DNA of 64,000 nucleotides from Laetmonice hystrix (taxonomy: Eukaryota): positions 17,670,001 through 17,734,000 of the forward strand of contig OZ249445.1 of NCBI GenBank assembly GCA_965235115.1. Direction: 5' to 3'. The number at the start of each line of letters is the position of its first letter. Positions within the stretch are counted from its first letter, which is position 1. Made by a program: the position numbers and the translations under genes. Below the pieces are notes generated by a model that made no database searches, had not been told where the DNA came from, and was given only the letters and a program-made list of their open reading frames with translations. Shown here piece after piece: positions 12,463 through 57,731 of this stretch.

Positions 12463-13348
12463 TGTGTGACCGATGATCCTGTATCTTGAATTCAGAAAGA
12501 ATCTTTGTGAAGTTAGCCGGAGATTAGTAGATGGTTGATCCTCCTCTACTGGAGGACATGGACACGGCTCCCAGATTTCTCATCACTTTGGATACAATTG
12601 ATTACGATGGCCACAGGCAGCTTAGTTCTCGTTACACCAACCAATTTACAGGCTACAGACAATGAATGGCCAGTAATCTTGTAGAGAAACAAATATTTAA
12701 AACGTAGCAAGATACGTGGACTGTGAGGTAACAGTCACCTGAATCCAGGCCTGATTAAGGCACTGAATTAGCGCCAACTTCAGCGCATGTCTTTAATTTT
12801 ATGTTTCTATTTAAAAGATACTTTGATCTTTGTTTTCCTGAATTCAGGTCCCATTTCTATGGTATGGTTTCCATCAGTGACTTTTTGGCCACTATTAATG
12901 GCACACCAGTCTTCTCTAATACAGGTCAGCAGCCCAGCAGAGGTACTCAAACGATATAATGTTTCTCTTTACAGGAAGATATATTTTATATTTTGTACCT
13001 TTGTAACTTAAGTCAGAGAAACTAACCAATAATTTTTGTTGCAGTGTTCAGGCCAAAAACAATTTTCTTCTAATTTAAGTGTGATTTTGAGTTGTGCACC
13101 AAATCTTTTATCAAATAGTTTCCGATAGTTTTGGTGACTTACTCAGTTTTCTATTGGATATGCTGGTTAGTAAGACTTTAATTCATTTGCAGAATAAGGC
13201 AGACATAATATTTATCTTGTTTTCAATGAAATGCCCTATTTCTCAACCATCTGGCAATTAATGCATATACCTATCATTAAGTGGTTAGTACATGTGTTAA
13301 TGCATAGATGGCGCTGATTTGAGCACATGCACATGTATGGGTTCGCAG

Positions 13349-14140
13349 GCTGTACCTCCCGTAGCCACACATTCTGACGTCACCCACACAACTAACACCA
13401 CAACGGAGGCGACTATCTCGTACTCACCAGCATCACCTGATTCGGATGCTGAACAGGACGAAAAAGACGAGGCGGATACGAACCGTGAAGAAGATCACAC
13501 AGCACGAACCAGTCTGTCCCTGTCGGCATCGGGCTCGCCTCCGAGCGAGAGGCACAGTACAGCCGAGGCTGCGTACGAAGACATGCTGGCTGATTTTGGG
13601 GAAGCCCAGGCGCCCCGAGCAGAAATGGAGGACGCCGAGTTTGATCTGTCTCCAATGGCACAGATTACACAACTGGAGATGATGGTTGCACGCCACTCGG
13701 CTCAACTCGACGAAGAACAAGATCGCATCGATGAAGAACGCGAACGAATTCTAAACGAACAACACCGGCCTGGTTTTGGTCCAAGTCAACCTGAACCTTC
13801 CAAAGAACCAGAGAGAGAGGACAATGAAGGAAAAGCCAAAGAAACACCAAGTCCAGAACCTGAACGGTTCCGGGCCCCAGGACCAGAGATTGAATCCGAC
13901 CTGGAGGCCGAGATCGAGCCCGAGACAGATTCCGAGCCCGAACCCGAGCCCGAGCTGAAAACACACGGTAGGGAACCAGCAAGAGAGCCCAGTCCCGAAC
14001 CTGACATTGCTCAATCCAGTCCCGAACCCGTGGTGGAGCGTGAACCGTCACCGAAACCAGAACCTACGTACACCTCAGTGTACAAGTACAGCAGGGAACC
14101 AGCCAAGGAAGCCGAACCCATGTCAAGGACCTACAAGCCG
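13349..14140 (+). CDS. Exon of the large LIM-domain gene: acidic, E/P-rich disordered segment (792 nt, phase 0-0)
   Basis: Lies within ORF 13319..14263. Acceptor ttcgcag|GCT and donor CCG|gtatgt. Contains EPSPEP/EPEPEP low-complexity motifs; the ORF tail after the donor looks intronic. Confidence 0.8.
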
Positions 14141-16526
14141 GTATGTCTTGATGCAAGGCGTCAACCTCGCAATCAGCTGGATGTAGTTTTCTCACTCCAA
14201 GTCTTTTCTCTCTTTTATTTGGTCTGCTCTCTGCTTCTTGATGTCAACAATCAGCAAATGTGAAGGCGATTACACATACTTTAGCCAGCAAGTTATCCAG
14301 AGTATATTATTTCTGTGGATCAAACTTCTTTGAAAACATAACTGTATAACAATATATTGATTATTTTAATGTGTCATAATCCTGAATGAAGAATACAATG
14401 TCGAAATCTGTTTTCCGTTATCAGAGCGATAGCGTCTACATAAGAGTAGTTTATGTTTACATAAGAGTAGATTATACTTAGATTTCAATTATATTGCTGG
14501 CTAAGAGTTTGTGTGTTCTACTTGTTGTTTGTACTGTTTTGTGCCGTCTGTCCCGTGATGTTTTAGTCTGTTGCTTCGCCATTTTGCCAGCAATTGGGGC
14601 AAATCTTGCTTCTTTTGTTGCCAATGGAGAAAAGTTCTATCTTGTTTTTTTACGATATTGTAGATTAATTATTGGAGATCATGTTGTGAGAATCCAGAGC
14701 CGTTTCTGTTGTTGTTCTGTTATTGTACAACAATCAGATTTATTGATAAAAATTTATTTCTCTTTTAGGTGACTTAAATTTGTTTTCAGTTTTGCGTTAA
14801 AGATGGGATAAATAGTTCATTTATTTGTACTATTTTGAACTGATTTATTTGTACAATTTGCTTTGTACGGTACTCTATGGCAGCTTTAAACGATTTCCTT
14901 ATTTTTGTTACTTTTCTACAGCGTATTGTCTGTTTCAGTCAGTAGTCAATATTTTAATAGTGCTAAGTCTGCTTTTGTTTGATTTCACGGTGAGAAAAGC
15001 AATTCGTGCCCTTACACCTTGGTCCTTATGTTTGAGTACCTGTCAGTTTTCTGTGTGCACTGTGGGCCTCAATCAAAGTGGCGAGACTGGATTACAAATG
15101 ACAGCTTTGCATCCTGTCATCCTTAATCCATCAACGCACATTGTAAATGAGCATTTGATTCAGGCGGTTTTTTCTCAGCATTTATACACTGCATTCTAAT
15201 TAAAATGATTCTTCTTCCTTTGGGTATTGCATGAGCGTGTACGTTATAGTTGTATACCTGTGGTCTTGAATGTTGTATGTACTTGGATCTGTTTTAAATG
15301 TTATGGTATCTAATTTGGTACATTATACATAATGCACTTTATCTTATATAAGTATATTTTTGCCCTTGTTTGATTTTCGTCATTGCGATGCATAATGAGA
15401 AGCTATTGTTTAATGTTATGACTGTAAGTTTAACAATATTATGTTCTAAGTATGTCACATGGTTACTTGATGGCATGAAATGAGTTGGACCAGAATAAGT
15501 CATTATTCAGAAAATAACTTGAAATGATATGAATGTATTTACATGTTTGTTGATGATCTCCATATGGTTCCACTCAATTAACTAAAAGCTCTGTTACCTT
15601 GTTACGATGTCATTTACTTGTCTTGACTGAGAAGCATTTTGAATCATGTATTGGATTGTCAATATCATTTTTCACCCACTTTCTTCCACTGTGGTGAGGT
15701 TGTTGGGTAGATTTCCTGATGTTTGACTCTTCGTTAGTTCCTAGACCCGGGGCCAATGCCCCCCTCAGGGATGTCTGACTGGACCATTCACCGCCAAATG
15801 GTTACAACAACCTCGAGTGGAAAGGTAGAGAAAGAAGAATTGACCCCAGGTTGACCTTGATATGTGTCCTTGACATTGACGCCCGTGTGACCTTGTAGAT
15901 CCAGATAAGACACAGTTTCAGTGTAGGGTCAGTGTGCGGGTGCCCAGTTGACCTAATTTTGACATCCGTGAGTGACCCTAGTTTGACCTTGCCCACAGGT
16001 GTGACCTTGGTGTAGCTGGAGGTTCTGTCAGTGCTCGGTGGTCACAATGTCTGAGAGTTCTCCTCCTCCACCCTTGATTTTGTAAGCTCAGTATGACCTT
16101 GGGTTGACCTTGTTGATTTTGGTGTCGTCCCGTCCACCTGGTGGTTTGGATCTATGTGGAACTCACTAACCTAAGGCAGCGGTACATTGAGTGGAACTTG
16201 GTTGTTTTCTCTGAGATTGGTTTGTGTGAACCAAAGGAAGAAAAGTTTTTGAAGTGGTCTCTTGCATTTTTATGCGTTTGTTTCTGTTGGTTAACCCCTT
16301 TTCCCGAAGAAAATGGCATCCAAAATCTAGGTCCTATATTTGTTGAAAGTGTGCTTGATTGGGGTGCTGGGTTTTTCTGGGTTGATTTTGTCAGTGTTCA
16401 AGGAAGTGTGATTTTTGTTGCAGCCGGGAGCGTGATCAAAATTAAAGGGACCGTTTTCATGTTGTGTCGATCTCTATGACAACCTGTGACGGTTTTTACT
16501 GACGTATTGTTGTGTTCGTGCTACAG

Positions 16527-18597: not shown

Positions 18598-19386
18598 CCC
18601 GATGGACATAAAGCCTCTACTCTATCTCCTACCCCTTCATTATACACAAACACACACTCTTTTGACATCACAACAAATAATATGACGTCACCACACGAGG
18701 CCAGTGTGACGTCATCAGTATTAGGGCAGGATGGCAGTTCGGCTGCCGTGAGCTCAGTCCATTGGGTGGAAAACATTCCTCCAGTAACTGAGGCTGGAGG
18801 AGAACTAATGTACAGCCTGGAGACCGTGTCCCACACTACCGAACCTGTTCAGTACAACATGGCCAGTTGTTTGAGCCAGGAGGTGTTGGTGGGGGATAGA
18901 CAACCACCTCTGTCTCCATTGAAAGAATCACCATGTGATTCTGATACTGGTGGTCAGGTTGAGGAGAGTCCAGCCAAGCCATTGTTAAGCCCTTGGAATG
19001 ACTTTGAAATCCCCTCCACAGATGACGTTGTTCTAGAGAATTCCAACCCTGTCAAAGTAGACGGAGGATTATCCGATTCCGATCCTTGGAAAACGTTCAC
19101 AATTCCATCAACTGACGAGTTTGATCATCTCGCTTCAAATCTGAATACAGAATCTCAAAACAGTTCGCTTGGTGCTGAAGATATGTCAAAGGTTATCTCC
19201 TGTGTGGAGATAGACAAAACTAAACAGAAGGATACCACTTCCAAGGTTGGTGACCATAGCCCCAGTGTAACTAATCTGAGATCAGCGTGGGAACCCACAT
19301 CTACACAAACACAGAAAACACATACACACACTCAACATATTACTTCATCAACAGGCACGCCCGCTCTGCCATTAAAACATGAAAAG
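18598..19386 (+). CDS. Exon of the large gene: S/T/D/E-rich disordered segment (789 nt, phase 0-0; alternative phase-0 donor at 19245)
   Basis: Lies within ORF 18592..19404. Pyrimidine-rich acceptor ...ctgtttatgcag|CCC; donors AAG|gtacat (19386) or AAG|gttggt (19245). Confidence 0.7.
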
Positions 19387-30126: not shown

Positions 30127-30148
30127 TTTATCCCGGGAATATGATCCG
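30127..30148 (+). CDS. 22-nt microexon (phase 2 to 0): (N)LSREYDP
   Basis: Very strong acceptor tttttctctcctttttctacag| and donor CCG|gtaagt. Required to keep the frame into the 1800-nt exon. Confidence 0.75.
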
Positions 30149-31797
30149 GTAAGTAATTTTCTGTTGGTCTCAGGTTTAATTAAACAAAAGTTGATCAAAG
30201 GGTGCTCAGAAATTCATCAGTTGTGACTGGTTGATTACGCTGATATCAGGAATGTAGTGTGGGAGAGGGGTATGTAAGAGGGAGGTCGAGGTTAGGAGGA
30301 GCTAGGGGGGTTGGGGGTTGGAAGGAAGCCAGAAGTGGCAGGTGGAAGAAGGGGAGTGAGGGCCTTTGCTACCCCACCCGGCTCTCACGACCGCGGTACC
30401 CCTCCCCAGCCTGTCTGTCACTCCATCCCCATCGTCCGGCAGCAGCAGCAGCCCCCATCTTCCAGTCAGGCTATATATAGCATTGTCCTAGAAGTTTTTA
30501 GTTACACATTGGCATATAAGTACTCTGGTTGAGGCGTGCCTCGGGAGCGTCGAGTTGTTGAGACCGACCGGACGTAGTGCCTGCTGTAGCGGGGTGGGCT
30601 GTGAACGAAGCCAGGGATCCAATCGGTACAGTGGGAGTGTATCAGCCAGCCTTGGTTTACCTGGCGCCCCCCGACCCAACCCTCTTCCCCCACCGTACAG
30701 TGGGGTACCCGCAGGGGCACCGGCAACGGGACCAAGCCGGCACTGGCGGCTGGCATACAAGTAATAGACTTGACCTAGAACTAGAGCCATGCACTGAGGG
30801 CAAAGCAAGCAGACAAGCGGGCAAGCAAGGGACCGGCTGAGACAGCCAGAAAATGGACCGTTAACCAGCAACTTGGACACTTGCATTTTCGTCCATTTAG
30901 CGCGGGGCCAGTTTTTCCTACAAAGTAAGTTTGGACTTGTTGAATCTGTGAGTCTCGAGTCGGGGAGGTTTGAGAATTGCGCAGCGTTTTAGAGATAAGG
31001 AGCCGGTCTGGGGAGGAAGGGTCTATGGAAGGTTCGAGTTGACGTGGAGCGGGCTACAACTGAGTCATCTTCATGGGACGGGCAAGACGTTGTAATAGTT
31101 TCAAGCAGAATAGTTTGTTTGATAATATTTTCTTATGAAACTGATACTTACATCACGGAAAAAAGAATGACTCAAATATTTCCCAAACTTACCAAAACCT
31201 CTGAAAATGATAAAACCTGGAAGATGAGAAGAAGGGTGGGATTTGAAACCTTCCCGCTTTAGCCTGCCTACAGTCAGAGTCTTCAGATCGAGTTGAGTTT
31301 AGTTTCTGCTACTATTATAACTGAACGGTTTCCCTTTGCCTGAGTGAATGCTGATTGGGAGAATTGTGGTGAAGTTATTGGGTGAGGGCCGTCTTGGCTG
31401 GCTGACTGGTTGGCCGACTGGCTGGCTGGGTGGGTGGGGTGTAAGCTGATAGACCGGGGCCATGACGCCCTTCCCGTCTCAGGGGGGTTCCTCGCTGTGC
31501 GGGACCGGCACAGACAGGTGTGAACAAACAGATCGGACTTAATAAATTCTGATCAACTCCTCATGATATCACCGTCACAATGGGTCGATGGTTTCTGGGC
31601 ATGCTTTAGCTGTATAATAACATCAAAGAAGAAATAAAATGTATTGTTTAAAAGCTTATGATTATCGAGCCAACGAAAAAGTAAACTAAAGGCTGTTGTT
31701 TATATTCATTATTGAATGAAAGCAAACATTTTTATATGATAGAAAGTGAGCTTTTGTTGAGCAGTTCCTCACGTCTGCCTTGATCTGTGTGTTCCAG

Positions 31798-33597
31798 GTT
31801 GAGTACTTCAAGGGTGGCCACGACTACACGAGCTACCAAGGCGGCAAGGTCGACGACCGGGCCAGGAACCGCTATGGAGTTGCACTGGGGACACCGGTCA
31901 ATAAGATCTTGATCGAGAAACTCCAAGCACCAAAGATCGCTACTTCTATGCGTCAGATGTTTGAAACTGGCGACTTTTTGGACCTGCACCGTGTACAAAA
32001 GTTGGAGATCAACCGGGAAGACGCCCCAGAAGCTGGTGTGTATGAAAACGCACCAAACAAGATGGAAGGAGTTGTACGTGAGTCTGATGAAGTGACCGAA
32101 GGTGAGGTTCTGGAAGAGGGAATGACCAAGAACATTGTTCACGCGTGGAAGCAGTTCTCCGTGGACAAAGGCACCGAACCCAAGCTCTCCACCATCACCA
32201 TCGACACTTCAATGAGTGGCCCCGCCGAGCTGGAGAACCAGCCCATCCGCTTGGACGGAGTTTACCGTGAAGAAGACCCTCTGGACGAGGTGGTCGTACC
32301 AGAAGAGGGCTTCACAAACAAGCTGCGCTATAAGTTCCTGTACCCTGAGGACAACAAGATTGAACGTGGACCAATCAAGTTGGTGGAACGTGAAGATGAA
32401 CCAGTCGTCTATGAGAACGAGCCTGCCGAACAAGCCGCAGGTGTCGTGAGGTCTGACTACGAGCAGGAGCAGATGGAGTACGATTCAGGATACATTCGTA
32501 ATGTGGCAGGATTCTTCGCTACCGTCACCGATGACAGCCGCAAGTCCAAGGCACCCATTGTCATTGACCGTAGCAACGTGACCATCCTGGAGAGCCAGCC
32601 CGTCACTCTCGATGGTGTTGTGCGTGAATCGGATGTGCAAGATGTGGATGCTCAACTCAGCCTTGAGCAAGGCCGCACTCGCAATCTTGCCAGCCGATGG
32701 CAGAACATAGAGGAGGACGGGCCCAAGGAACGCAGGCAGCCCATCAACATGGATCTGGCCCCTGAAGCTGGTGTGCTTGAGAATGAGCCGGTCGTTCTGG
32801 ATAACGTCATCCGTTGCGATGCTCCAACGGAGGACGTAATGCTTCCAGGCGCTCCTGGAAGAATCAAGACCATAGCTGGCCGCTTTATCTCACCATCTGG
32901 TGAGTATGAAGGTAAACGCAAGGACATGATTCAGATCGATTTGGCAGCCGAGTCTGGCGTGGTGGAGAACACACCCGCAGAGCTTGCCGCCCATATCGTC
33001 CGCTGTGATGCGTACACAGAAGATCAGAACGAGGTCCGCATTGACCAGGGAACAGCAGGAAGCATGAAGTCGAGATGGCGTGAGCACGAAGAAGACCACA
33101 TGAAGATCCGTTCAACTGCCGACTTCCAAGAGGGACCCACGCCTTCGTGGATTCGCGAGCTCGAGAGCAAGGGTAACGGCGGCGTTTTCGAGAATCAACC
33201 CAACGAGCTCGAAGGGGTCCACCGCGAGAGGGATATCAACCCAGATGAAGTTGAGGGAGAACTAATCCAGTCCAACTTCTCCAGGTCAATGAAGAACATG
33301 TGGCTTACCCGAGAGGCCGAAGAGGAGAGGAGGATCGCTGAATCTCGCAGATTTATCCCTGAGGTAATAAAAACTGATGGCCGCCTCAAACAAGCGATAC
33401 GCGAAGCTGAAAGAGAAATGCGTTCATTAGAGACCCCGAGAGAAAAATTTGAAAGGGAAAGGAAGGAAAAGAAGGAAAGGGCAGAGCGGGAGAGGGCAGA
33501 AAGAGAGGCAGAGGAAGAGAGAAGGAAGCAGGAGGAGGCAGAAAAAGAAAAAGAAAGGGAAAAAGAGAATAGGAGAGCAGGCCACCGAAAGAAAAAG
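31798..33597 (+). CDS. Giant exon (1800 nt, phase 0-0): seven ~62-aa repeats followed by an E/R/K-rich helix. The frame stays open to a stop at 33670-33672.
   Basis: Lies within the 630-aa ORF 31780..33672. Acceptor tgtgttccag|GTT; phase-0 donor AAG|gttacc at 33597 (alternative phase-2 donor at 33668). Confidence 0.9.
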
Positions 33598-35029
33598 GTT
33601 ACCCAGCCTGCAGCAGCAGCAGCAACAGCAGCTGCTGCTGCTGGGAAACCCAAAGTGTCATTATTCAGGTAGAAGGCTACTGACTGTGCTGATCTGAGCA
33701 AAGAGTGGGGCCAGGGGACCCCATCAGAGCATGCCCAAGCTCGTCAGAGCTTTGCTGGGCTCTTAGTGCTTCGTGGAGCTGATCCAGAGAGAGCCTTTGA
33801 GTGGAGCGAGGGTACAGGAACTTATAGCGCAGCAGCTAAAATCTTGAATTGTACTCCATTTACTCTTGCTCGCCGTCATACCTCATTAAAAAGGTAGTAG
33901 TCGGGTAGAAAAGTGTTGGCTCTGGGAGTTGATAGCTATGTCATAAGAACCATGTGAGTTCGTTTGAGAAATGAAATCAGCTCTTGATACTTATAGCTCA
34001 GTCAGCAGTCAGTACTGCCATCTATCTGTGGTCGGCAGTCCGTGGAGTCAGCAGCAGCAGAATCAGACAAGAAAGGCATTTGAACTGTTGGGAGGGGAAA
34101 AATAGAGCGGCTGAACTTTTATGTTGCTATATTACACGCCAAAGTGCATTTGGAGACAGTCATGCTTTTTTTTTCTTTTTGCTCGTTATTATGATTTGCT
34201 GATCTATTGATCACGGAACTGGTGCTATGAGAAGACCACACAGCTATGGCCAAACGGGACCTTTATTGAAGAGACACGATGGAAAATGCACGCACGCATT
34301 ACCAATTCCATGAAGCGCAATTCATGGCAGTGACTCAAACTAACTCTTAACATGCCGAACTGGTGGATTAATATTATATATTTAAACGCGGATCAGTAGT
34401 ATCATATCGCTTCCAATAACTACAGCTGTCTGAATATCTTAAATTATACGTAGAGGAAACTCGCGACTTTCAGTCATCAAGTGTTGTGATTTTCACTGAC
34501 TTGAGGTTGATGATCTTGCAGATAAAGACCTCATGTATTCACTGCCTTACATTGGGAGACAGCTTTCTGTGTGGTAAACTTAGTATATTGTGTGTAGAAA
34601 GTGAAACTGAACACGTTACTGTGGAAGCACCCAGGAATGGAACACCTAAGTTATATGTTTGCCATTAGTCTGGCAGGAGAGATACTTTTGATTACACTTC
34701 GTCAAGTGAAAGACGTTGGGTTTTGGACAAAGCCCTGCCTGAACAATCTTGGGAAGTCAATATGTGAACTAGTATAAATGTGCTGGATTCTGGATTACAT
34801 CAACATTTATGTCTATGGAGACCACTGGAATTTAAAAACTAAAAAAAATGGATTGATAATCTTGGAGTACAAGGGCTATTATTAAATATCTATAGGATTA
34901 AAACAAAAATAACAATGGTCCCTATAGGGATGATGCAATTGAAGTAATACAGAAAAAGACCAAAAAATGCAGTTTAAAAAAAACCCCTAAGGTTCATGCA
35001 AAATGTGTGGATAGTGGACATGTATGTCC

Positions 35030-35189
35030 TTTGCATTTCTTGAAAACATACATTTTGCATTTCTTGAAAACATACATTTTGCATTTCTTGAAAACATACA
35101 TTTAATGAAAACATACATTTTGCATTTCTTGAAAGCACACATTTCCTTTTCTGAAAACATACATTTTGCTTTTCTTGAAAACATACATT
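35030..35189. repeat. Degenerate 24-bp tandem repeat (~6-7 copies)
   Basis: tttgcatttcttgaaaacatacat units. Confidence 0.85.
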
Positions 35190-36841
35190 GTGTGAACATA
35201 ATGTAGCGGCAGGTCAATGAAATTTTACCCGACCAGAGTTTGATTCGATTTCTCCGCACCAGATAAAAGAGATCATAATTGAACAAAGATTATCGTAGAA
35301 TTATACATTTGGCTATATTTTATTGACATAGTTTTACATTACTAGGGGCGGGTGGAACAGCCCAAAAAATATTCAGATCGCTACCGAAAATATTAAATGT
35401 GCGTCTTAATGTTAAATTTAAAACATTGTCCTCATGAAAAATGATTACTACGGTGAAAAGAAGCAGGACGATTAAAGTAAATGGTACGTTGACATATCTA
35501 CAATAGATAACACAGAAGCTTAACATGCCTGACTTGATTCAAAAGGCATTTGTTAGTAACAAAAAGGCGAATCCTTAATGAACAAAAATGATGTAATTGA
35601 ATATGATACGCTAATAGTTTATCGCTTCTATTTCCTCATCTTAAAAAACATTAATTCGCTTGTTCGGCAGTTTTGTCCAAAATCGTCCAAATTATACATG
35701 AAGCCCTATCTGCAAGTTTCAGCTAACCATTAGCTTCAATATTGCATCTATGAGAACCAGTAAATGGAAAAAGCTTTTATAATTTAGGTAAATACCGACG
35801 CCGTTACTCTCCTCTGTGCCATCATTTGACAGGAAAACGGAATTGTTCAGTTCTGTACATGCTTATAACCTAATCGTTGTGTTTGTGTTTGGGAGAGGTC
35901 TAGTATTCAGTATCAAGTACATGTATTTATTATGGTTTGGGTTCAGACATGACGACGATAATAAGACAAAGGCACAGAATCATAATGTGATACTACTGTC
36001 TACGTTCGTCCCAAACCTTTGAATTTTGAAAGTTTGGGGACACTGACAGTACGATACTAATTGCCAAAGATATTACATCGTTTCGTTAAAAAGAAAATAC
36101 GAGAAAACATGGTTACGTACATGGACTTACTTAAGCCTTTAAGGGCTTCTAGACTGAGTTTCATGAAGTAGATACATGATCCACCATGGTGCCTTAAAAA
36201 GAGAGTTGGGAAGGGTTAGGTTTTTTTCACAGAGCACCAAGACGTTGAATGAGGTGGTCCAAGTGATTACTACGGCAAAAAGAAGTGGGAAGATTTTCGG
36301 TGGGGAAACTATAAAGTAAATGTTACGTTGACATATCTACAATAGATAACACAGAAGCTTGATATGCCTGACTTGATTCAAAAGGCATTTGTTATTAACA
36401 AAAAGGCGAATCCTCAATGAACAAAAAATATGCACCAAAGAAGGATTGTGAAACAATTAACAGCTTAGATGAATAAGATTCTGAAACACTGTTTATGTTG
36501 ACTTCTGAATCCGTTAGAAAGGTGATTAGCATAATAGAGAAAGAAATGGAGATGGCGGGACCTCGAGGTGATAGGTGGGCGGAAAATAAGAGAAGGGAAA
36601 ACAGTCTAGCAACAACGACCATTCAGCTCTTAACAGGGGTCTGTGGTTTTATAGAAGAATGCCTTTGATATTTATTCAGTTTCACTAATATACAGATTAT
36701 GTATTTGACGGCGTATTAACACATTGTACATCTGACATATGTACTATATCAATAAATGTTCTGTCAAATTGCTGCCTCGATTTCTTGATTTCCAATAAAC
36801 ACCAACTCGTATCTATATGTGGAATGCCTGATTGGTTTCAG

Positions 36842-37015
36842 CCGATTCGTTTCACGCCCCCGCGTGATGCGACACCTCCCCCAGTCAACCAAGAGACAAC
36901 GCAGTCTTTCCAAACTCTCACACTATCTGAGCCATCTGGCCAGGAAACTGTGACAGAAACCTCCGAAACTATCACCTTTGATGCCCCAGCTCCCCCACCT
37001 AAGCCGGAGAAGAAG
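36842..37015 (+). CDS. Exon (174 nt, phase 0-0; alternative donor at 37042): PIRFTPPRDATPPPVNQETT...PPPKPEKK
   Basis: Lies within ORF 36785..37096. Acceptor ggtttcag|CCG; donors AAG|gttacc or AAG|gttggc. Confidence 0.65.
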
Positions 37016-38519
37016 GTTACCCAGAGATCTGAAAGGAAAAAGGTTGGCCCCAAGTCCTCAAGCGTCAAGTCCTCAGCGACTCTTGTCTTCTCATAAATTT
37101 TCAGAGCCCTCGCAGCACGCGCAGACTGTCATTCACAGCTTGTAAAGTCATCACTGGCACGTATTGACTGCCCTCACAAAGCCCTCACTGTAATATCTAC
37201 TGTAAAAGTTTATCAGGTATACCCAGCGTTAAGTCCCAGCTGGTGTAAGTGGCAGATTTCGGTGCGTGAACCAAGGATGACTTTGCAAAGCCCGTACATG
37301 TTGATTTCAGAAGAGGAGGCCTCCCGAAAGTCTCAGTAAAAGCCAAATTAAAGCAGAACTGCTATGCCATGAATTAAGAAAAAAGCTGAACCAGAGCCTC
37401 GTCTCGATCCACTCTTTCAGACACTAACTCAAAAAGGGGAAAATAAAAAAAAAAATAAAACAAGGTCACCTTGTATAATATTTTGTGGACCTTGTATAGA
37501 ATGATGCCTCCGAATGTCCTTTCGGGATGCCTGCTTCCAACAGAGGAGCCGTCTGTAGACGACTGGCCGGGTCTCCGCTCTGTACAACAACCTTCCCACA
37601 ACGTACTCGGAACATTTCACTCTTACTGCGGACATAAACAGCACAAACCTGCCGGAGAGAGGTAACAAAATGGGGGATAATCAAAACTACGACCTAAAAC
37701 CGCATCATTGAGGGCACAAAGTGAATCATGGGACACCAGTGCATTGTGGGAAGGTAGGCAGACGGAAGTGCCCCCTGGGGACAGGAAACAGTGAGCTGAT
37801 GAATAATGTTGGATGCAAGGTGTTAATTATGTAATGAAGTTCAATTTTCTTGTTATTGTTTTTCACAAGACGGCTTCAGTAACTATTCTCTAGGATGCTT
37901 TTTTTACGGAACCTTAGCTTTCTGTTATTTTGAACGGGGGAAAAATATGAGGTACTCGGTGTGCTTCATTGTAAAAAAGTTCAACTAAATGGCAAGCTTT
38001 TATTTCCAACTAACAATTCAGGTAGAGGAAAAGAGGGTTAAAAGAAGAATGAAAGATTCCAGGTGTTTTTTTTAAAGTGACTGTGTGAAGATCTGCACAG
38101 GAAACCAGTCTTTCAAAAATCCTTCCAGTATTTGTCACAAAATGTTTTTTATATTTCCACCATATACTCACTCACTCAGTCACTATTTCCACCAGTGATG
38201 AAGTTTAGCCTTTAAGGCCGAATTCGGGACATTTCCCTCCCCCCAAAAAACAACTTTGGCAAATACCAAATTGGCAATTCACTGAATACTATAACAGGAT
38301 GATTGCCCGAGCATTATAAGTCGACGTGAAAGGTAGAAGAGCACTTTGGCCTTAAGCGCATCATCTATTGTAGGTACCTTGTAGTAATACCTTGGTAAGT
38401 TCAGAGATAGATCTAGATGTAGCACCCCGTGAATAGATAGAGAGTAGTAAAAATAGATGGTGAGTCTTGAGTCTGGGATGCTCCAGAACATCGGCCCGGC
38501 TGCATCCGTTCAGGTAGCG

Positions 38520-47735: not shown

Positions 47736-47921
47736 GAGGAGGACGTTGCTAGTCCGGCCTCCACTGCCGGTAGTAGCCGGGCGGTGACGGTGGCCGCTCG
47801 GGCCGCCGACCCGGCCCCCGAGTACGAGGTGAAGCCATCACAGCCCTTTGGTTCCCTCCTTGCTAAGTGGAAAGTGGAACCCTCTCCTCCGGCGCCCAAA
47901 CAATCGCCCAAGTCCATGCAG
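47736..47921 (+). CDS. Exon (186 nt, phase 0-0): EEDVASPAST...FGSLLAKWKVEPSPPAPKQSPKSMQ
   Basis: Lies within ORF 47676..47966. Acceptor gttttccccaag|GAG and donor CAG|gtagag. Confidence 0.7.
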
Positions 47922-50889: not shown

Positions 50890-51014
50890 GGTGCGGGTGA
50901 CAACCGTTGTCAGCTGTGTAACAAGCGGGTGTACGAGATGGAGAAGTTGATATCAGACAAGGCTATCTATCACAAGATGTGTTTCAAGTGCTCACACTGC
51001 AAGCGGATCCTCAG
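50890..51014 (+). CDS. LIM domain exon 1 (EPLIN/LIMA1/LIMD2/XIRP2-type LIM), phase 0 to 2
   Basis: GAGDNRCQLCNKRVYEMEKLISDKAIYHKMCFKCSHCKRIL gives C-x2-C-x17-H-x2-C-x2-C-x2-C. Acceptor tttgtag| and donor CAG|gtaagg. Confidence 0.93.
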
Positions 51015-52170
51015 GTAAGGCGCCTTCAATCTCAATACCCGGGACCAGTTTGTTCAAAATAACAAGTCTTAAATTCATGATTAAGCTTGAGGCGTTTGAT
51101 TGGCTGGTCTTCTTATAACCAGGTTATCAGAAGCAGTAAGCTCACGTTTAAGCAAGATTTTAAGTTTTTAAAAAAACAGGACTGAGCAAGGTTTTTGGGG
51201 AGCGGTTCCGGACCATTTTCCGGACCATTTTCTGGAGAAAAGATATCTTTTGATTATTGAACTGTCAAGAGACTGCATTAATGTAAAGTTTTTGAGGAAA
51301 TTTATCAATATGGATGTTGGGTGAGACTTTGATTGAAAGTTTAAACGAGAGAGCACTAATGTCAAGTCAGTTTTTGACGAAGCCGACCAGATATATTTGG
51401 TGAGATATTTTCGAGGTGACTTTGCCCTACCACTGCTGGTACCATGGAATGCTGGAGTATAAAGTTACCTGAGAATGAGGTATACAGGTGAGAGGTATTA
51501 CTTGAAACAGGTGCCGGAGGATTGGGTGGGGGGGGGGGTCCTCCCGGCTGACAGCTGCTTCCATCAGTCGTACAACCCGCCACCTGGGATCAACTATTCA
51601 CAACTTGAGGAGGCCACACTCTCTTGACATTGACTTGTGTAAGGCCAAAAACTCGAATGAAATGTAATACCATAACTTTACATTGGAGTCATTTAACCCT
51701 TGGATGTTGCTTTCACTAGACGTTACATGTCAACTTATGATGGACGCTAGGTCGGTCTGTGGACACGGTGTCCAACTGTCACCGTGTCAATAAACATAAT
51801 AAACTAGTCCCCCCCCCCCTCCCCCACCAACAGCCCGGTTGTCATGGTGACAGAAGACGAACAGTCGCCTTATACATAGCAACAGCTGCGGCCGAGAACA
51901 CGGACCACTCAGTCGTGGGCCGGATTTCTTCCGAATTCATGGAAATTGTCGGGGGGAAAAAGGTGTAGCGTTACTGTGAACGTTGGATAATTTCGTTGCC
52001 TTCCGGCAGTAGTGTTGAGCTCAGGTGTGGGGGAGTGTACCGACGGTCAGGATGCTGAGGTCTATATCAACATTATCTTTTTATTATCTCATCTCTTACC
52101 CATCTTGTGGACACTTGGGAAGACTTGTTTTAAGCGGACTGTAAAGAAAAAATATCTTTGATATTTTTAG

Positions 52171-52244
52171 CCTCGGGAACTTTGCTTCAATGGAGGGCCA
52201 GCTTTACTGCAAGCCACACTTCATAGAGATGTTCAAAACTAAAG
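52171..52244 (+). CDS. LIM domain exon 2, phase 2 to 1
   Basis: (S)[24 protein letters not shown] completes x17-C-x2-H. Acceptor atttttag| and donor AAG|gtgaga. Confidence 0.93.
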
Positions 52245-52486
52245 GTGAGAAGAACATATATTAGCGTGCCAGGGGATGCAGAGAAACACTTGAACTGGGA
52301 TGAAAAGGTGGGGAGGTGATGGCTTTCATGGACTACCCAGTAACCAGTGTTTGTGATTATGATATCGAATATAAATATTAATGATCTAATCGGCTCTCTG
52401 TATACATGGACTCGTATAGACTGTGGTGGCACATTCCTACTTTACTTAACCAACCCGGTGTTTTATATACCACTCTTTGTTACCAG

Positions 52487-52558
52487 GCAACTACGAGGAG
52501 GGTTTTGGCAAGGAGCGGCATTCACGAATGTGGCAGAAGGACTACTCACCCGAGGAAG
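52487..52558 (+). CDS. Post-LIM exon, phase 1-1
   Basis: (G)NYEEGFGKERHSRMWQKDYSPEE matches the KGNY(D/E)EGFG..H...W tail typical of EPLIN/LIMA1- and LIMD2-type LIM domains. Acceptor ctttgttaccag| and donor GAAG|gtcagt. Confidence 0.88.
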
Positions 52559-55500
52559 GTCAGTCTCAATCTACAAATCTATCGTATTGGAGAGTAACAC
52601 ACACAAGTTCTGTGTGCAGGCTGGCCCACAACTTGTTGAAATCAAATATGAAACAAGAATTCGTTTCTTATTCAAATTACCATCACCGGCTTCTACAAGG
52701 TGATATCAAGTTGGTGATATACCGACCCCCCCCGAGTTATTTTAATTTCCTCTTTGTATGAAAACCGGCCTCAGAGCTGTATTGGTTTCACCTCGAGGAT
52801 ACATTGCCTACTTTCTCTACGAGTTGCAGGTTGTGGCCCACCCTGTAAAAAAAGTGTACAATGATGCCAGGTGGTGAGAGTGGTTACTAACATTGAATTC
52901 GGTTTCCAAGGTGATGAGCGAATGGACGCCATTCAGAGAATTTCTTTACCCCCCCCCCCCTAATACTTGCATTGTAGCCGATCACTGAGGGCCGGTCACA
53001 GTAAAACACCCTCAGGTAAAAGGTACAGATATTCTAGATTGATTTAATAAAAAATGCTTTCGGCAAGACGCCTGTACATATCAAATTGTACAAATATATA
53101 GAAGACAAGAAATGAAGAGTGAGAGCATACTCACCAGGTGGCGCCAGTTATTTCCTCAAACCAAGGGAGCGCGAGTGTGGAGTAAGAGTGAAAACAATGC
53201 TGACTGACGTATTTCCTGTCGATGTGAACGCGGAGGTGGAGAGTGTTGAGGCCCGCCCCATGGTGGTGCCACCTGGTGTGTATGAACAGAACTCGAGCCG
53301 GATCGTGCCCCGATCTGATGGAGACTGTGGATTGTCGTCAGAGAGCCGACCTACCCTCACGTATAGTCGGACATGGTTGGCGTGTGTTTTACTGTCAACC
53401 TTTCACTAGATCAATGATTGATATTATAGTATGATGATCAGGAACTGTCTCACAAATGTTCTCACCACACGTTTCAAACATTCAGCCCAGATAAAGATTG
53501 TGAGAGATGGTGAATTGTGACCTGAAACCGAGTGGCTCCCACTGGTAGAGTTTCGGTTTGTCCTTCTATTGGAGACGTTTGTTGTATTGTTGTGAGCTCC
53601 AGCAGACTTGTACAAACCGCGGTGTGGAGGGGGGGGGGGGGGGGTTGTAATGATAGGTTGGTAGAGATAGCGTATCCCGCCTACCAGTCTGCAGACCCAG
53701 ATAAGGCGGTGGTGTTGACGACGTCTGCTATCTGCCGACCCCCATCCGATCTCTCAGCACAAACTGATGAAGTGTTGCAGGCTCGGCCGCCCAGTCGTTT
53801 TTACTGTGTGCACGTCTAACATGATATAAATCGAGGATGTCATCTGATTAGGGCGTCGATTGTCACAGATTAAACCTCAGGGGGTTGGAAGAGAAAAACG
53901 GGGGGAGGTATTGAAGTATGTGGCATTGTGTAAGGTGAAGACTTGATGCATAGATCAGTTTGATGTGATGAGCCGTTGTTATACACAGTTGATGTATCAG
54001 TTATTAATGTACAGTCTATAATGACCGTGAACCTACTCGAGCTATCATTAGTGAGCTAAGATACACAAGCCTAGATTTGTTATAGTGTTAGAACGACAGT
54101 GGTGGATGTCTGATTGGGACCTGGTACAAGTACTGGTACAAGTAGCAGATATGATTGGTCACAAATCCGGCTGTGCACTGATTGGATATGGTTATAAATC
54201 CGCTATTATTATTCACATGCTGTGATGAACTTTGTGAGCCTTCTGCCCTATTGATATAGACTATATACATCTGGTGAAGTCCAGTTTACACATTTGCAGT
54301 GGTACTGAGTTTTCGTCCACTCCTCACAGTCGTTTTACGCCCGTGAAGCTTAGATTTGTAAACAGATGAAACGGTCAAATCACCCGTCAAAATATTGTTT
54401 TTATTAAACAAACTTTGAGTATTGAGTTGGCTCTGACCTGGCCCGGTGAGTTGATGTCAGCAGTCCAGCGGGTCACATGTCAGCAGACCCCATTGATTGC
54501 TGGTAGGGGTAGGATCGATCCACATCATGTGGCCCACAGACTGACTACCTGTACACACAGGTGGTCGGTTAATGAACTCACTCCGGTATAGGTAGACCGT
54601 GTCTGTGTAGCACTCAGTGTCCGGTGAACCAGTCACGGCCGCTCACCTACACCAAGCCCGGTAAACTCCCCGTACCCCGTCCCGTGGGTGGACCCCCCGG
54701 CGGGGAGGAGGGACAGGTGATCCCGTCCACAGGGGTCAGCACAACTCGTGACCCACGTCTGCCGTGTTGGGCCGCTCGTCCAGGTACACGGGTGTGGAGA
54801 GTCTAGGACGGATCAACGTCGTTTACGTCACGTCAAGATATTTCACCGGATACGTCAAGGTTGACACCATTACGTCACGGTCCACCTGGAACCGTCAAGG
54901 TCCATTCGGGACCGTCAGGGCGTCACGAGCCCAGGTGAAGGTCACCGTCCTGTAGAGGAAGAATCGGGGTTTAGCTAAACCCGGATAAAATGCCCTCCCA
55001 CGTTCTGATCCGGGGCAGAATCATCTGTATAGGTGAGTGTTGAGTGAGGATTCGGTAAGACCGATTCAGAGCTGCTGTGGCATATCGTACCATGAGTACA
55101 ATCTTTATCATTATTAGCATTTCCTTTATTGCTGAATTTGTGTAGGCCAGTCGTCATTGGCATAGTTATAATCAAATACACGTGTTAATTTGGATGTAAT
55201 ATATAGAAGGTTCGGGAGGTCGGTTAAATATTTCACCAGCTCTCGTACGTTAACTCCTATAACTGTTCATACATGATACTATGTGATGATATACATGTCG
55301 GAGAATACTCTCGAGGGAGAATTCCCATTCAAACTGTTCCGGGACAACACCGGTATGTTTCTTATAGTCATGGAAGGTCTTAATGGTTCTCTGTGACCTC
55401 TCATAGCTGGGACTCCTAGGATATCCTCGGGTTTTGTAAGGGTATATTGTGAATGAAGAAAGTAGGTACTTACTGTGGTAGGTTTTTGATTTAGATATGG

Positions 55501-55990
55501 ATTGGATTGAGTAGTTTAGTTGTTGGGTTACCGAGATGGTTCACCATACAGGATATCCTTAGATGTGTAGGAACTCCACCGGGCATACCGCAAATACTAG
55601 ATTAATTCTGTCCTAATGACATGTTAGAGTGTCAGTAGATGGGCCAAATGCTTGAGACTGGGAGTGGGTTTTGACATTTAAGCGCATTAAAGGGTAATTT
55701 TTCAGTGATTAATTACGTCGGATTTCTTTGAGGCTGAAGTTGCGGAAGATTAGAGGAAATTAATGATATTGGAAACCGATTGAAAACAAAAATGTGAGAG
55801 ACAGATGAGAAGTTAAGTCGGCAGGGTTTGTGGCGAGGGGAGGAAAGGAGGTTACAAAATGTCATCTTTCCCCCAAACGACCTTGGTGTGATAAGAAAAA
55901 GGTCATTGAGTACCGTTTGGGTGATGTGATTTAAGAGACACGTGACATTGATGTGAAATGGCTGTGGCGGCGACTATCGTTCGATCATGG

Positions 55991-56514
55991 GAGGACTGTG
56001 TCTGAGAGTGAGAGGACTGTGTCTGAGAGTGAGAGGACTGTGTCTGAGAGTGAGAGGACTGTGTGTGAGAGTGAGAGGACTGTGTCTGAGAGTGAGAGGA
56101 CTGTGTCTGAGAGTGAGAGGACTGTGTCTGAGAGTGAGAGGACTGTGTCTGAGAGTGAGAGGACTGTGTCTGAGAGTGAGAGGACTGTGTCTGAGAGTGA
56201 GAGGACTGTCTGAGAGTGAGAGGACTGTGTCTGAGAGTGAGAGGACTGTGTCTGAGAGTGAGAGGACTGTGTCTGAGAGTGAGAGGACTGTGTCTGAGAG
56301 TGAGAGGACTGTGTCTGAGGACTGTGTCTGAGAGTGAGAGGACTGTGTCTGAGAGTGAGAGGACTGTGTCTGAGAGTGAGAGGACTGTGTCTGAGAGTGA
56401 GTGGACTGTGTCTGAGAGTGAGAGCACTGTGACTGAGAGTGAGAGCACTGTGTCTGAGAGTGAGAGGACTGTGTCTGAGAGTGAGAGCACTGTGTCTGAG
56501 AGTGAGTGGACTGT
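55991..56514. repeat. 21-bp tandem repeat, ~25 copies
   Basis: gaggactgtgtctgagagtga units with a few indels and 3' divergence. Confidence 0.97.
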
Positions 56515-57731
56515 TAATGGTGCTCGTCTGAAGGAATCAAGTAAGATTGGAGGATTGGGTTCCGACACACATACGTACCTTAGCCTTGTTATACCCCAGT
56601 ATTGGCTAAGAATGGCCCAAGGGAGGAGATTGTGGACGATTGGTGGCGACAAGCACTTTTGGGGCCGCGTGAAGTGGTGGGTAGGGTACAAGGCACTCGA
56701 GGCAGGAAGGTGTAATGACAGAAATGTCATTAGACACTGACAATCCTAGTTAGCTGAGCGACTATGTGTTTTAGTGATAACAAGAAATGTATGCATTCAT
56801 GGTTGCGCCGCTCTATCGCAGAAAACCTATAATCGAAATGAAAATGTCAAAGTATTTTCTGTGATTAGATTTATTGAATTTCCACGCAGGGAAAAGATTG
56901 TTCACTTTTGAACGCCATTGCAGGGGATTGTTATTGTAGTGTTCTGACTAATTAGAATGCCAGCCCAGGCAATCAGCAAGCCGCCTATGTGGGGTGATAC
57001 ATAGCAGTGTTTCCCATTCCAAACAGACGAACCAAGATGAAATTACAATGGTCATTATGAGAACTAATATTGACTTTGACAGAAAGATTATATAGCAGGC
57101 AGGGGGGCAGGTGGTGGAGGGAAAGAACGACGTCGGTGGTTATTTATAGTCAGCCCTCGGTCCGTTAGATTTCTCGAGCTGACGTACATACATCACAACA
57201 TGTTACCCAGGGGAATCGACTCCGCCATGCATGTAAACGTCGGGCGGCAGTACCAAGACAAATAGAACCGAATTATGGATTCTCCGGCCGGGGTCTGGTG
57301 TACGCCAAACTTTGCGGCCTCACCAATCGAGACTTGGTAGGATTCAAATGAGGACAGAGCCCTCTGGTGGGTAAGGGTGGAACTATGGCCGTATGGAGGC
57401 AGGGTAGTGGGTGATCGATAAGGATCCAGCGTTACCCCGGCGAAACTGGACGAGCGTGGTTGGTGGTGGTTGGGGGCGGGGGGTGGGGGGTGGGGGGTGT
57501 AAGGGGGGGGGGTGTAATCTTACCAGGCCATCACGACCGCCTCTATCTCCACGACTCCGGGCGGTCACTGGGATAGTTCTGGGCCGGGGTGGTGGCGGTG
57601 GGGTCGGTGTGCGTGCAGCGTGCCCGGCCTATGACATCAGGATATAAGGGACAGTGCCGGATGGTGCCGGTATCATCAGCCCACTCCGGCTGATAGCAAA
57701 ATTAACAGCCTTGGGACAGTGGTTTGTGGGA

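What the first reader, a model, noticed from the sequence alone, without database searches (positions are those of the whole stretch)
31933..33597. Seven ~62-aa repeats with caldesmon-like W/F motifs plus an E/R/K helix in one exon of an EPLIN-type LIM protein
Seen: the EN-x-P...GVVR-x-D core recurs at ORF aa 89, 152, 212, 271, 334, 396 and 471 (spacings 63, 60, 59, 63, 62, 75). A short helix-like motif ending in W/F occurs 8 times: SMRQMFETG, GMTKNIVHAW, GFTNKLRYKF, GYIRNVAGFF, GRTRNLASRW, GRIKTIAGRF, GTAGSMKSRW, NFSRSMKNMW. An E/R/K-rich stretch follows (EKFERERKEKKERAERERAEREAEEERRKQEE). Similar motifs recur outside this exon: VTNLRSAWE at 19267-19293 and FGSLLAKWK at 47847-47873. Established: vertebrate caldesmon has the actin-binding segment GVRNIKSMWEKG and a central ER/K single alpha-helix, and EPLIN/LIMA1 is an actin-bundling LIM protein. 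Inference: this may be an invertebrate multivalent F-actin binder, ruler or cross-linker that combines caldesmon-like features with an EPLIN LIM domain. I do not recognise the 62-aa unit as a named domain family.
Basis: partly seen in the sequence, partly recalled or inferred. Interest (0 to 1): 0.78.

Follow-up and report, generated by a model that had tools for sequence, protein, structure and literature searches.

The report
Unnamed actin-type repeat array near EPLIN
This annelid-like exon encodes seven copies of a conserved but unnamed, disordered two-part repeat found beside or inside EPLIN/LIMA1-type LIM genes across protostome animals; it probably binds actin filaments at many weak sites, but that has not been tested.

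Summary
The repeats are real. Over 655 repeat instances from about 105 proteins, E is 100%, P 99% and W/F/Y 98%.

No Pfam-A model, including Xin and caldesmon, and no solved structure matches. All named relatives are "uncharacterized" or "titin-like".

The family is found across protostomes:
- Annelids, molluscs, a brachiopod and a flatworm have full repeats.
- Insects, a mite and a springtail have degenerate ones.
- Amphioxus LIMA1 keeps only the helix half.

AlphaFold2 predicts a disordered chain with a helix at each W/F motif.

- The exon runs 31798-33363.
- An RNA-like contig splices 33363 to 36842, skipping the E/R/K stretch, and ends at a stop at 37094-37096 with no LIM domain.
- The E/R/K stretch is the in-frame tail of a read-through form (stop 33670-33672; poly(A) site at 36768). 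The frame is conserved in one relative.
- The LIM exons (50.9-52.6 kb) more likely belong with a second, degenerate repeat array 18-24 kb beyond the window, as in Owenia and arthropods.

Actin binding is inferred from the motif pattern only; the complex prediction gave no answer.

The parts
31798..33363 (+). Coding exon (522 codons, phase 0 at both ends): an N-terminal helix motif followed by the seven-unit repeat array
   Evidence: X4 contig covers 31798-33363 with zero depth in 31400-31793. AG acceptor at 31796-7 and GT donor at 33364-5. The relative's locus L001 aligns at DNA level only across 31792-33550.
31945..31971 (+). N-terminal copy of the helix motif (SMRQMFETG), the only copy with F-E as in the published VxxLxxxFE motif
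   Evidence: Conserved as VRxxFExG in 24 annelid-type orthologues. AF2 helix at residues 46-57.
32005..32154 (+). Repeat unit 1
   Evidence: HMM i-E 1.7e-18
32200..32343 (+). Repeat unit 2
   Evidence: HMM i-E 1.2e-12
32371..32526 (+). Repeat unit 3
   Evidence: HMM i-E 1.6e-15
32554..32715 (+). Repeat unit 4
   Evidence: HMM i-E 2.9e-17. AF2 with a 117-sequence alignment: pLDDT 73, extended motif A, helix at motif B.
32737..32892 (+). Repeat unit 5
   Evidence: HMM i-E 1.9e-12
32926..33090 (+). Repeat unit 6
   Evidence: HMM i-E 3.3e-13
33163..33315 (+). Repeat unit 7
   Evidence: HMM i-E 1.3e-14
33364..33672 (+). Read-through extension past the donor: 102 codons plus the TAG stop, ending ...KPKVSLFR. 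The E/R/K-rich core is at 33439-33579. This is an alternative C-terminal tail, not part of the spliced form.
   Evidence: In the relative P0001/L001 the frame stays open: 51% identity, three in-frame indels, identical C-end. X4 contigs cover 33648-36768. Composition.
36753..36768 (+). AATAAA signal and poly(A) addition site of the read-through transcript
   Evidence: X4 contig ends at 36768 with 22 non-templated A. AATAAA at 36753-36758.
36842..37096 (+). Next exon, joined to 33363. It starts PIRFTPPRD and, read unspliced, ends ...SSATLVFS with a TAA stop at 37094-6, giving a LIM-less C-terminus.
   Evidence: GT..AG joint 33363>36842 in an X4 contig that runs on unspliced to at least 37300. 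The same junction is collinear and intron-free in P0008, P0016, P0018, P0024 and P0030, and in the Paralvinella model P0233.
30127..30148 (+). 22-nt upstream coding micro-exon spliced to 31798
   Evidence: Loose end of an X4 contig matches 30127-30147.
30895..30924 (+). 3' end of an alternative upstream exon spliced to 31798. It has an in-frame TAG, so it is probably 5'UTR; the first ATG in the repeat exon is at 31948.
   Evidence: Exact match of a loose end of an X4 contig.
50890..51016 (+). EPLIN-class LIM exon 1. Linkage to the repeat exon is not shown.
   Evidence: tblastn with Owenia and mollusc proteins, 45-62% identity. Translation and splice sites. It is the only such exon near this locus.
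52163..52246 (+). LIM exon 2 (limits taken from the alignment)
   Evidence: 71% identity to Owenia P0077 residues 441-468.
52486..52572 (+). Eplin motif next to the LIM domain (NYEEGFGKERHSRMW...)
   Evidence: The motif is defined in PMC3305314.

Best explanation
Exon 31798-33363 encodes the seven-unit array of an unnamed two-part repeat family found across protostomes, in or beside EPLIN/LIMA1-class LIM genes.

The chain is intrinsically disordered. Each ~60-aa unit has three parts:
- (A) an acidic, extended, almost invariant motif [VI]-hydrophobic-E-[NS]-x-P-x4-[DG]-V-V-[RK]-x-x-D;
- an acidic linker;
- (B) a basic amphipathic helix G-x-[TA]-[KR]-N-[LMI]-x3-[W/F].

Shown here: the array is real, expressed, spliced and conserved. 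The one spliced RNA-like contig found ends in a product without a LIM domain (stop at 37094-37096). RNA also covers the read-through path, which would end in a basic tail with a ~47-aa E/R/K helix.

Inferred: the array lies along actin filaments as a multivalent, low-affinity side-binder. [quoted passage not shown] Motif A would make a second, extended contact. Many weak sites together would give avidity, as in Xin or nebulin arrays.
For: - Seven units at the stated places.
- phmmer against 1.84 billion representatives found 104 real relatives. All named ones are lophotrochozoan and uncharacterised.
- A profile search adds Lingula, Macrostomum and many insects, the insect hits all carrying a LIM domain.
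- Column statistics over 655 repeats: E 100%, N/S 99%, P 99%, V 87%, R/K/H 93%, G 90%, L/M/I/V 95%, W/F/Y 98%.
- Repeat-by-repeat orthology with P0001 (7 of 7) and Paralvinella (6 of 7).
- Seven is the commonest unit count. Unit length is tightly held: about 60 aa in annelid arrays, about 82 aa in molluscs.
- AF2 gives low pLDDT overall but a helix at each W/F motif. A single unit with a deep alignment reaches pLDDT 73 but pTM 0.23, with motif A extended and motif B helical.
- Helix B fits P4 and P8 of the VxxLxxxFE F-actin motif. That paper reports loss of F-actin localisation when P1 and P8 were both changed to alanine, and lists CALD1 and XIRP1/2 as carriers (bioRxiv 10.1101/2025.04.16.649135).
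- Gene context: EPLIN-class LIM plus Eplin motif downstream (PMC3305314). Mollusc orthologues fuse array and LIM.
- Amphioxus LIMA1 carries the VVK...GTASNLKKRWE half-unit.
Against: - No binding data exist. The actin-plus-unit complex prediction scored 0.00 ('no answer'; ESMFold2, alignment not used, disordered peptide).
- P1 of the published motif is Val, whereas here it is T/A in 87% of repeats. P9 is Glu there, whereas here it is mostly K/Q.
- The array is acidic (pI 4.66), with motif A and the linker about -3 each. This is unlike the basic nebulin or the caldesmon C-terminus.
- Motif A is the most conserved part and has no known counterpart, so the key partner may not be actin.
- No Pfam Xin or Caldesmon match.
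- The W/F-helix pattern is short, and such patterns arise often by chance.
Confidence: 0.5

Rival explanations
1. The units are docking sites for a Ca2+ sensor (calmodulin or a troponin-C-like protein). Each basic amphipathic helix with a Trp/Phe anchor would be a calmodulin target, so the array would buffer or scaffold calmodulin, or be switched by it. This could coexist with actin binding, as in caldesmon.
For: Helix B is basic (+1 to +3), amphipathic and anchored by W/F. The SFM preprint notes that calmodulin displaces caldesmon's motif from actin.
Against: No test was done. It does not explain the invariant motif A. Many helices of this kind do not bind calmodulin.
Confidence: 0.15
2. The array binds a non-actin partner through the invariant E-N-x-P...DVVR motif, for example a myosin, alpha-catenin or another junction or sarcomere protein. 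The W/F helix would be secondary.
For: Motif A is more conserved than helix B (E 100%, P 99%). AF2 gives it raised pLDDT (76-85) without secondary structure, as is typical of binding motifs. It is acidic, so it suits a basic surface. Vertebrate LIMA1 has partners other than actin (PMC13329885).
Against: No candidate partner was identified. No known motif class matches it.
Confidence: 0.2
3. The array is mainly an acidic, disordered elastic spacer or entropic spring of the muscle or cortical cytoskeleton (PEVK-like). The conserved motifs would only tune its stiffness or weak self-association.
For: Disordered prediction. Acidic, E-rich composition. Automatic names such as 'titin-like'. Arrays expanded to 17-25 near-identical-length units in some relatives.
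Against: Spacers do not normally keep invariant E/N/P/W positions and repeat-by-repeat orthology over long times.
Confidence: 0.1
4. Each unit is a small folded domain rather than a pair of linear motifs.
For: Regular unit length. pLDDT 73 for one unit with a deep alignment.
Against: pTM 0.18-0.23, no tertiary packing, and only one helix per unit. No PDB relative.
Confidence: 0.05

Closest known systems
EPLIN/LIMA1 class of LIM proteins (LIMA1, XIRP2 short form 'xeplin', LIMD2; Koch et al. 2012, PMC3305314)
   Same: The locus has an EPLIN-class LIM domain followed by the Eplin motif (GNYEEGFG...). Mollusc orthologues carry the array and this LIM domain in one protein. Arthropod and Owenia EPLIN-class proteins carry the same repeats after the LIM domain. 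Amphioxus LIMA1 keeps the VVK...GTxxNLKKRWE half-unit. Turtle LIMA1 aligns its GTLSVLKKKWEN at the helix-module columns, but not significantly.
   Different: Vertebrate LIMA1 and xeplin have no detectable full unit (E 0.04-7) and no FTPPR motif. In this annelid-like genome the seven-unit exon is seen only in a LIM-less transcript.
[quoted passage not shown]
   Same: A short amphipathic helix in a disordered region. Hydrophobic residue at P4 (L/M/I/V 95%) and aromatic at P8 (98%). It occurs in tandem copies, as in XIRP.
   Different: P1 is T/A rather than V. P9 is K/Q rather than E. P8 is W more often than F. The helix is coupled to a second invariant motif that the SFM class lacks. Binding is untested.
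Xin repeats (Pfam PF08043) of XIRP1/2
   Same: Tandem actin-binding units in proteins tied to an EPLIN-class LIM domain. G..K....W and [LV]-F-E-[TN]-x-P strings are both present. A protein-language-model search placed Xin clusters third and fourth (score 0.77-0.78, below the reliable range).
   Different: The Xin unit is 16 aa and contiguous. Here the two strings lie in separate modules of a 60-aa unit. The Xin HMM finds nothing in the exon, in 117 single repeats or at this locus.
Caldesmon C-terminal actin/calmodulin site and central single alpha-helix
   Different: No Pfam Caldesmon match. The E/R/K helix is short (~47 aa, ~7 nm), sits in an alternative C-terminal tail, and was confirmed in frame only in one close relative.
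Nebulin / nebulette repeats
   Same: Regular-length tandem units, with seven as the preferred number, proposed to follow the actin filament.
   Different: No SDxxYK motif and no Pfam nebulin match. This array is acidic and disordered rather than basic and helical. Unit length differs between lineages (60 vs 82 aa).

Membership tests
EPLIN class (Koch et al. 2012) | EPLIN-type LIM domain with the ~22-aa Eplin motif directly C-terminal to it | tested here: met
   LIM exons 50890-51016 and 52163-52246, then NYEEGFGKERHSRMW at 52486-. The LIM-region search returns LIMA1 and XIRP2.
EPLIN class (Koch et al. 2012) | The repeat exon and the LIM domain are parts of one protein | tested here: inconclusive
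   Yes in molluscs. Here the only spliced RNA contig ends at the stop at 37094-6, before the LIM exons. The Paralvinella and Helobdella models are LIM-less. Owenia and arthropods place the LIM domain before a different repeat array.
Xin repeat (PF08043) | Match to the 16-aa Xin profile | tested here: not met
   No hit at E<=10 for the exon or for 117 single repeats. A whole-genome scan gives no hit at this locus.
Caldesmon (PF02029) | Match to the caldesmon/LSP profile | tested here: not met
   Absent from hmmscan at E<=10.
Short linear F-actin motif (VxxLxxxFE) | P4 aliphatic and P8 aromatic on a helix inside a disordered region | tested here: met
   L/M/I/V 95% and W/F/Y 98%. AF2 helices at all eight motifs in a low-pLDDT chain.
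Short linear F-actin motif (VxxLxxxFE) | P1 Val (the preprint reports loss of binding when P1 and P8 were both changed to Ala) and P9 Glu | tested here: not met
   P1 is T 46% / A 41% / I 8%. P9 is K 34% / Q 12% / L 11%. Only the N-terminal copy (MRQMFE) has F-E.
Short linear F-actin motif (VxxLxxxFE) | Binds F-actin | tested here: inconclusive
   Complex prediction with this genome's own actin (L002:1492-2619) and unit 4 scored 0.00, 'no answer'.
ER/K single alpha-helix | Long run of E/R/K with i,i+4 opposite charges, no G/P and almost no hydrophobic residues | tested here: met
   aa 554-600: ERK 0.75-0.86, 13-15 i/i+4 opposite-charge pairs per 28 aa, hydrophobic fraction <=0.07. This is composition only; the helical state was not measured.
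Protostome EPLIN-associated repeat (proposed here) | Two-part unit (E-[NS]-x-P...DVV[RK] plus G-x-[TA]-[KR]-N-L-x3-[W/F]) together with a [KR]-x-[FI]-T-P-P-R-[ED] motif | tested here: met
   Seven units. PIRFTPPRD at 36842-36868. The same FTPPR motif is present in all 16 protostome members checked and absent from the 3 chordate proteins checked.

The most novel reading that the evidence does not exclude
The two-part unit may be the ancestral actin-binding module of the whole EPLIN/XIRP lineage. On this reading the vertebrate 16-aa Xin repeat (G..K...W-L-F-E-T-x-P-L-D) is a condensed fusion of helix B with the start of motif A. That would move the origin of Xin-type repeats from the vertebrate stem back to the bilaterian ancestor. 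The conserved seven-unit, fixed-pitch array would then act as a filament ruler that contacts seven successive actin subunits, one tropomyosin period.
Probability: 0.12. Interest if true: 0.75.

Novelty: new variant of a known kind. Interest (0 to 1): 0.52.

Why it matters
EPLIN/LIMA1 and XIRP are studied almost only in vertebrates, and their actin-binding regions are mapped only coarsely. This work defines a conserved, unannotated repeat family, with a usable HMM, invariant residues and a companion FTPPR motif. The family marks the protostome side of that lineage.

It gives clean, repeated sequences in which a Lifeact/caldesmon-like helix and a second invariant motif can be tested one unit at a time. 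It would also improve the annotation of hundreds of mollusc, annelid and insect proteins now labelled 'titin-like', 'MICAL3', 'enolase-phosphatase E1-like' or 'uncharacterized'.

If the link to Xin repeats held, it would change the accepted view that Xin repeats are a vertebrate invention.

Tried and rejected
- **Complex prediction.** This genome's own intronless actin plus unit 4 scored 0.00, 'no answer'. The tool folded without my alignment and is untested on disordered peptides. This is not evidence either way.
- **Pfam.** Scans of the exon, of homologues and of 117 single repeats gave only scattered chance hits and no Xin, Caldesmon or Nebulin.
- **PDB profile search.** One chance hit (APC subunit MND2, E 0.76).
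- **Xin HMM over the whole genome.** Nothing at this locus.
- **ESM Atlas feature search.** All scores were under 0.8. Xin clusters ranked third and fourth; this is a lead only.
- **P0092.** A 2,736-aa hit with 26 stretches turned out to be a PKD-repeat protein, a false positive.
- **Repeat-by-repeat orthology between this array and mollusc arrays.** Not recoverable; scores are at noise level.
- **Candidate donor at 33597.** Rejected as a real splice site because it is not conserved in L001, even though it would keep the frame (234 nt).
- **Outlying motifs.** The helix-module HMM does not support the motifs at 19267 and 47847.
- **Literature.** Searches for an invertebrate EPLIN/LIMA1 description found none in the held library. 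The SFM preprint's table of sequences is held only as images.
- **Reads.** Only one reads call was allowed, so the LIM exons and the upstream exons could not be checked in RNA.
Full report
**1. Observation**

The + strand holds a 630-aa ORF at 31780-33672. E[NS]xP cores lie at ORF aa 89, 152, 212, 271, 334, 396 and 471. Each is followed about 25 aa later by a G-x7-[W/F] string. A further copy, SMRQMFETG, lies upstream of the first unit. An E/R/K-rich run follows. Its core is aa 554-600, with ERK fraction 0.75-0.86, no G/P, and 13-15 i/i+4 opposite-charge pairs per 28 aa. A repeat HMM trained mostly on other species finds all seven units at i-E 1e-12 to 2e-18. The sequence features are therefore real and not chance.

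**2. Exon limits and transcripts**

Four runs from one sample hold the stretch. Three behave like DNA. The fourth, X4, behaves like RNA:
- It has no depth in 31400-31793.
- One contig covers exactly 31798-33363.
- It shows a GT..AG joint from 33363 to 36842.
- One contig ends at 36768 with 22 non-templated A.

The sequence agrees. There is an AG acceptor at 31796-7, a GAG|GTAATA donor at 33363|33364, an acceptor at 36840-1, and AATAAA at 36753.

The spliced contig runs on unspliced from 36842 to at least 37300. Its reading frame therefore ends at TAA 37094-6 (...SSATLVFS), and the product has no LIM domain.

Two upstream partners of the 31798 acceptor were located. One is a 22-nt coding micro-exon at 30127-30148. 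The other is an exon ending at 30924 that carries an in-frame stop.

The GT at 33598 is absent from the relative's locus.

**3. The E/R/K stretch**

It lies after the donor that the spliced contig uses. It is nevertheless unlikely to be plain intron. In the 71%-identical relative (P0001, locus L001), DNA similarity exists only across 31792-33550, and nothing further downstream aligns. Even so, the tail stays in frame through three indels, is 51% identical, and ends in the same KPKVSLFR-stop. Together with the poly(A) site at 36768, this points to a second isoform. That isoform would read through the donor and end in a basic tail (pI 10) holding a ~47-aa E/R/K helix.

Other annelid-type relatives either fuse the next exon directly (..PE-x-VRFTPPRE..) or have unrelated read-through ORFs. 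Several of these ORFs are long and charged. The E/R/K helix itself was confirmed only in P0001.

**4. Relatives**

phmmer against 1.84 billion representatives gave 105 hits. One of them, P0092, is a PKD-repeat false positive. The named hits are Helobdella, Owenia, Paralvinella, Haliotis, Gigantopelta, Magallana, Mizuhopecten, Liolophura and Babylonia. All are annotated 'uncharacterized', 'titin-like' or similar. Paralvinella is the closest named relative (38% identity), so the window is probably annelid.

A profile search added many more molluscs, the brachiopod Lingula, the flatworm Macrostomum, and many insects (aphids, ants, bees, beetles, a fly, a moth, a psyllid); the insect hits all carry a LIM domain. 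The unit HMM confirms that these hits rest on the repeat motifs. The same HMM also gives significant hits in a mite and a springtail.

Amphioxus LIMA1 matches only the second half of the unit (VVKS...GTASNLKKRWES, E about 3e-5 in a targeted set). Vertebrate LIMA1 and the XIRP2 short form 'xeplin' align only at the short helix-module strings (turtle LIMA1 GTLSVLKKKWEN; xeplin forms VSTKILKEQFEK-type), and not significantly.

**5. Anatomy of the unit**

The figures come from 655 repeat instances.
- Motif A is [VI](92%)-hydrophobic-E(100%)-[NS](99%)-x-P(99%)-x4-[DG](89%)-V(87%)-[VI](82%)-[RKH](93%)-x-x-D(75%).
- Motif B is G(90%)-x-[TA](87%)-[KR](88%)-[NS](75%)-[LMIV](95%)-x3-[WFY](98%).

A third signature, [KR]-x-[FI]-T-P-P-R-[ED], is present in all 16 protostome members checked and absent from the three chordate proteins checked. 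In the window it opens the next exon (PIRFTPPRD, 36842-36868).

Seven is the commonest number of units, seen in 27 proteins. Some relatives have 12-25. Unit pitch is tightly held at 58-64 aa in annelid-type arrays. In molluscs it is about 82 aa, with a position-specific pattern shared by oyster, scallop, abalone and Gigantopelta.

The seven units are one-to-one orthologous with those of P0001 (7 of 7). The match with Paralvinella is 6 of 7. Orthology with mollusc units cannot be traced.

**6. Structure**

AlphaFold2 on the whole exon with 24 orthologues gives mean pLDDT 52 and pTM 0.18. Helices fall exactly at the eight W/F motifs and nowhere else of note. One unit with a 117-sequence alignment gives pLDDT 73 and pTM 0.23. 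Motif A is extended, with raised confidence, and motif B is helical. This is the picture of a disordered chain carrying linear binding motifs, not a folded repeat domain.

The array is acidic (pI 4.66). Motif A and the linker are about -3 each, and helix B is +1 to +3.

**7. Locus architecture**

Only one EPLIN-class LIM exon lies nearby: 50890-51016, then 52163-52246, then the Eplin motif from 52486 (the class is defined in PMC3305314).

A scan of the whole genome with the unit profile finds only this array and a second, degenerate array. The second array lies 18-24 kb beyond the window's end on the same strand (G000:C11:17752246-17758338). It carries RKPVRKMTPPRDD and a last unit with the D-x-D-W signature of molluscs.

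That order, LIM then repeats, is the architecture of Owenia P0077 (LIM at 403-468, seven units at 581-1222). All arthropod members checked have it too. Molluscs have units first and LIM at the C-terminus. The Paralvinella and Helobdella models of the seven-unit protein are LIM-less and end in the same ..T-[LV]-x-[LF]-type C-terminus as the window's product.

The most economical reading is two transcription units in this genome: a LIM-less seven-unit gene (about 13.3-37.1 kb; its N-terminal acidic exon matches P0233), and a LIM-plus-degenerate-repeat gene downstream. A long isoform joining both cannot be excluded.

**8. Mechanism**

A 2025 preprint (10.1101/2025.04.16.649135) defines the short F-actin-binding motif VxxLxxxFE from cryo-EM of ITPKA and Lifeact on actin. 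The motif is a helix in a disordered region that sits in the cleft between subdomains 1 and 3. Its Kd is 13-89 uM. F-actin localisation was lost when P1 and P8 were both changed to alanine. The preprint lists CALD1 as a carrier and XIRP1/2 as proteins with repeated copies.

It departs at P1 (T/A, not V) and at P9 (K/Q, not E).

I therefore rate 'multivalent weak F-actin side-binder' as the best explanation at about 0.5. The function of the more conserved motif A is unknown.

The one direct computational test used this genome's own intronless actin with unit 4. It gave no answer.

**9. Novelty**

No Pfam-A family, solved structure or paper in the held library describes this unit.

It is a new repeat family within a known protein class and a known style of mechanism, namely tandem linear motifs along actin as in Xin or nebulin. 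I therefore class it as a new variant of a known kind.

The more daring reading is that Xin repeats derive from this unit and that the seven-unit array is a ruler. It rests only on string resemblance and a sub-threshold language-model lead. The Xin HMM finds nothing.

Noticed in passing
G000:C11:17752246-17758338 (L017:1958-2989 and L017:7592-8344), 18-24 kb beyond the window's end, + strand: A second, degenerate array of about six units lies downstream of the LIM exons. Several units lack the E-N-x-P half. It also has RKPVRKMTPPRDD and a last unit with D-V-D-W as in molluscs. It is collinear with the C-terminal half of Owenia P0077.
   Followed up: partly
window 36842-36868; also the relatives: [KR]-x-[FI]-T-P-P-R-[ED] is a third signature of the family. 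It is present in all 16 protostome members checked and absent from amphioxus LIMA1, turtle LIMA1 and mouse xeplin. T-P-x-R fits a proline-directed (CDK/MAPK-type) kinase consensus (from general knowledge, not tested).
   Followed up: partly
window 33595-33672 and 37012-37096: The two alternative C-terminal ends look like duplicates. Both start AAG GTT ACC CAG (KKVTQ) and both end in a ..S-x-(T)-L-x-F-x-stop. Annelid relatives end in the same kind of C-terminus (SSTVLILK, ATISLLRK, TTLTFK).
   Followed up: partly
window 30895-30924 and 31948: One upstream exon spliced to 31798 has an in-frame TAG. Transcripts using it would start translation at the first ATG of the repeat exon (31948, MRQMFETG...), giving an N-terminally short form.
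   Followed up: no
window 30467-30523 vs L001:9292-9348: A 57-bp block is 84% identical to the relative's locus. It is the only alignable DNA outside the repeat exon in 16 kb compared, so it may be a conserved small exon or regulatory element.
   Followed up: no
P0002, P0003, P0004, P0006, P0007 (metagenome or ENA contigs); Helobdella P0018: In some relatives the array has grown to 17-25 units at an almost constant 59-61 aa pitch, encoded without introns on 4-11 kb contigs.
   Followed up: partly
window 13319-14263 (+): A 314-aa acidic, P/E-rich ORF matches the N-terminal region of Paralvinella P0233 (aa 100-195, 35% identity). It is probably the N-terminal exon of the same gene.
   Followed up: partly
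window 55903-56740: A long run of short tandem repeats gives open frames on both strands (SDTVLSL / RGLCLRV reiterations). It looks like satellite or minisatellite DNA rather than coding sequence.
   Followed up: no
G000:C6:11271850-11272980 (L002:1492-2622): A complete, intronless 376-aa actin gene, one of two full-length single-exon actin matches in this genome.
   Followed up: partly
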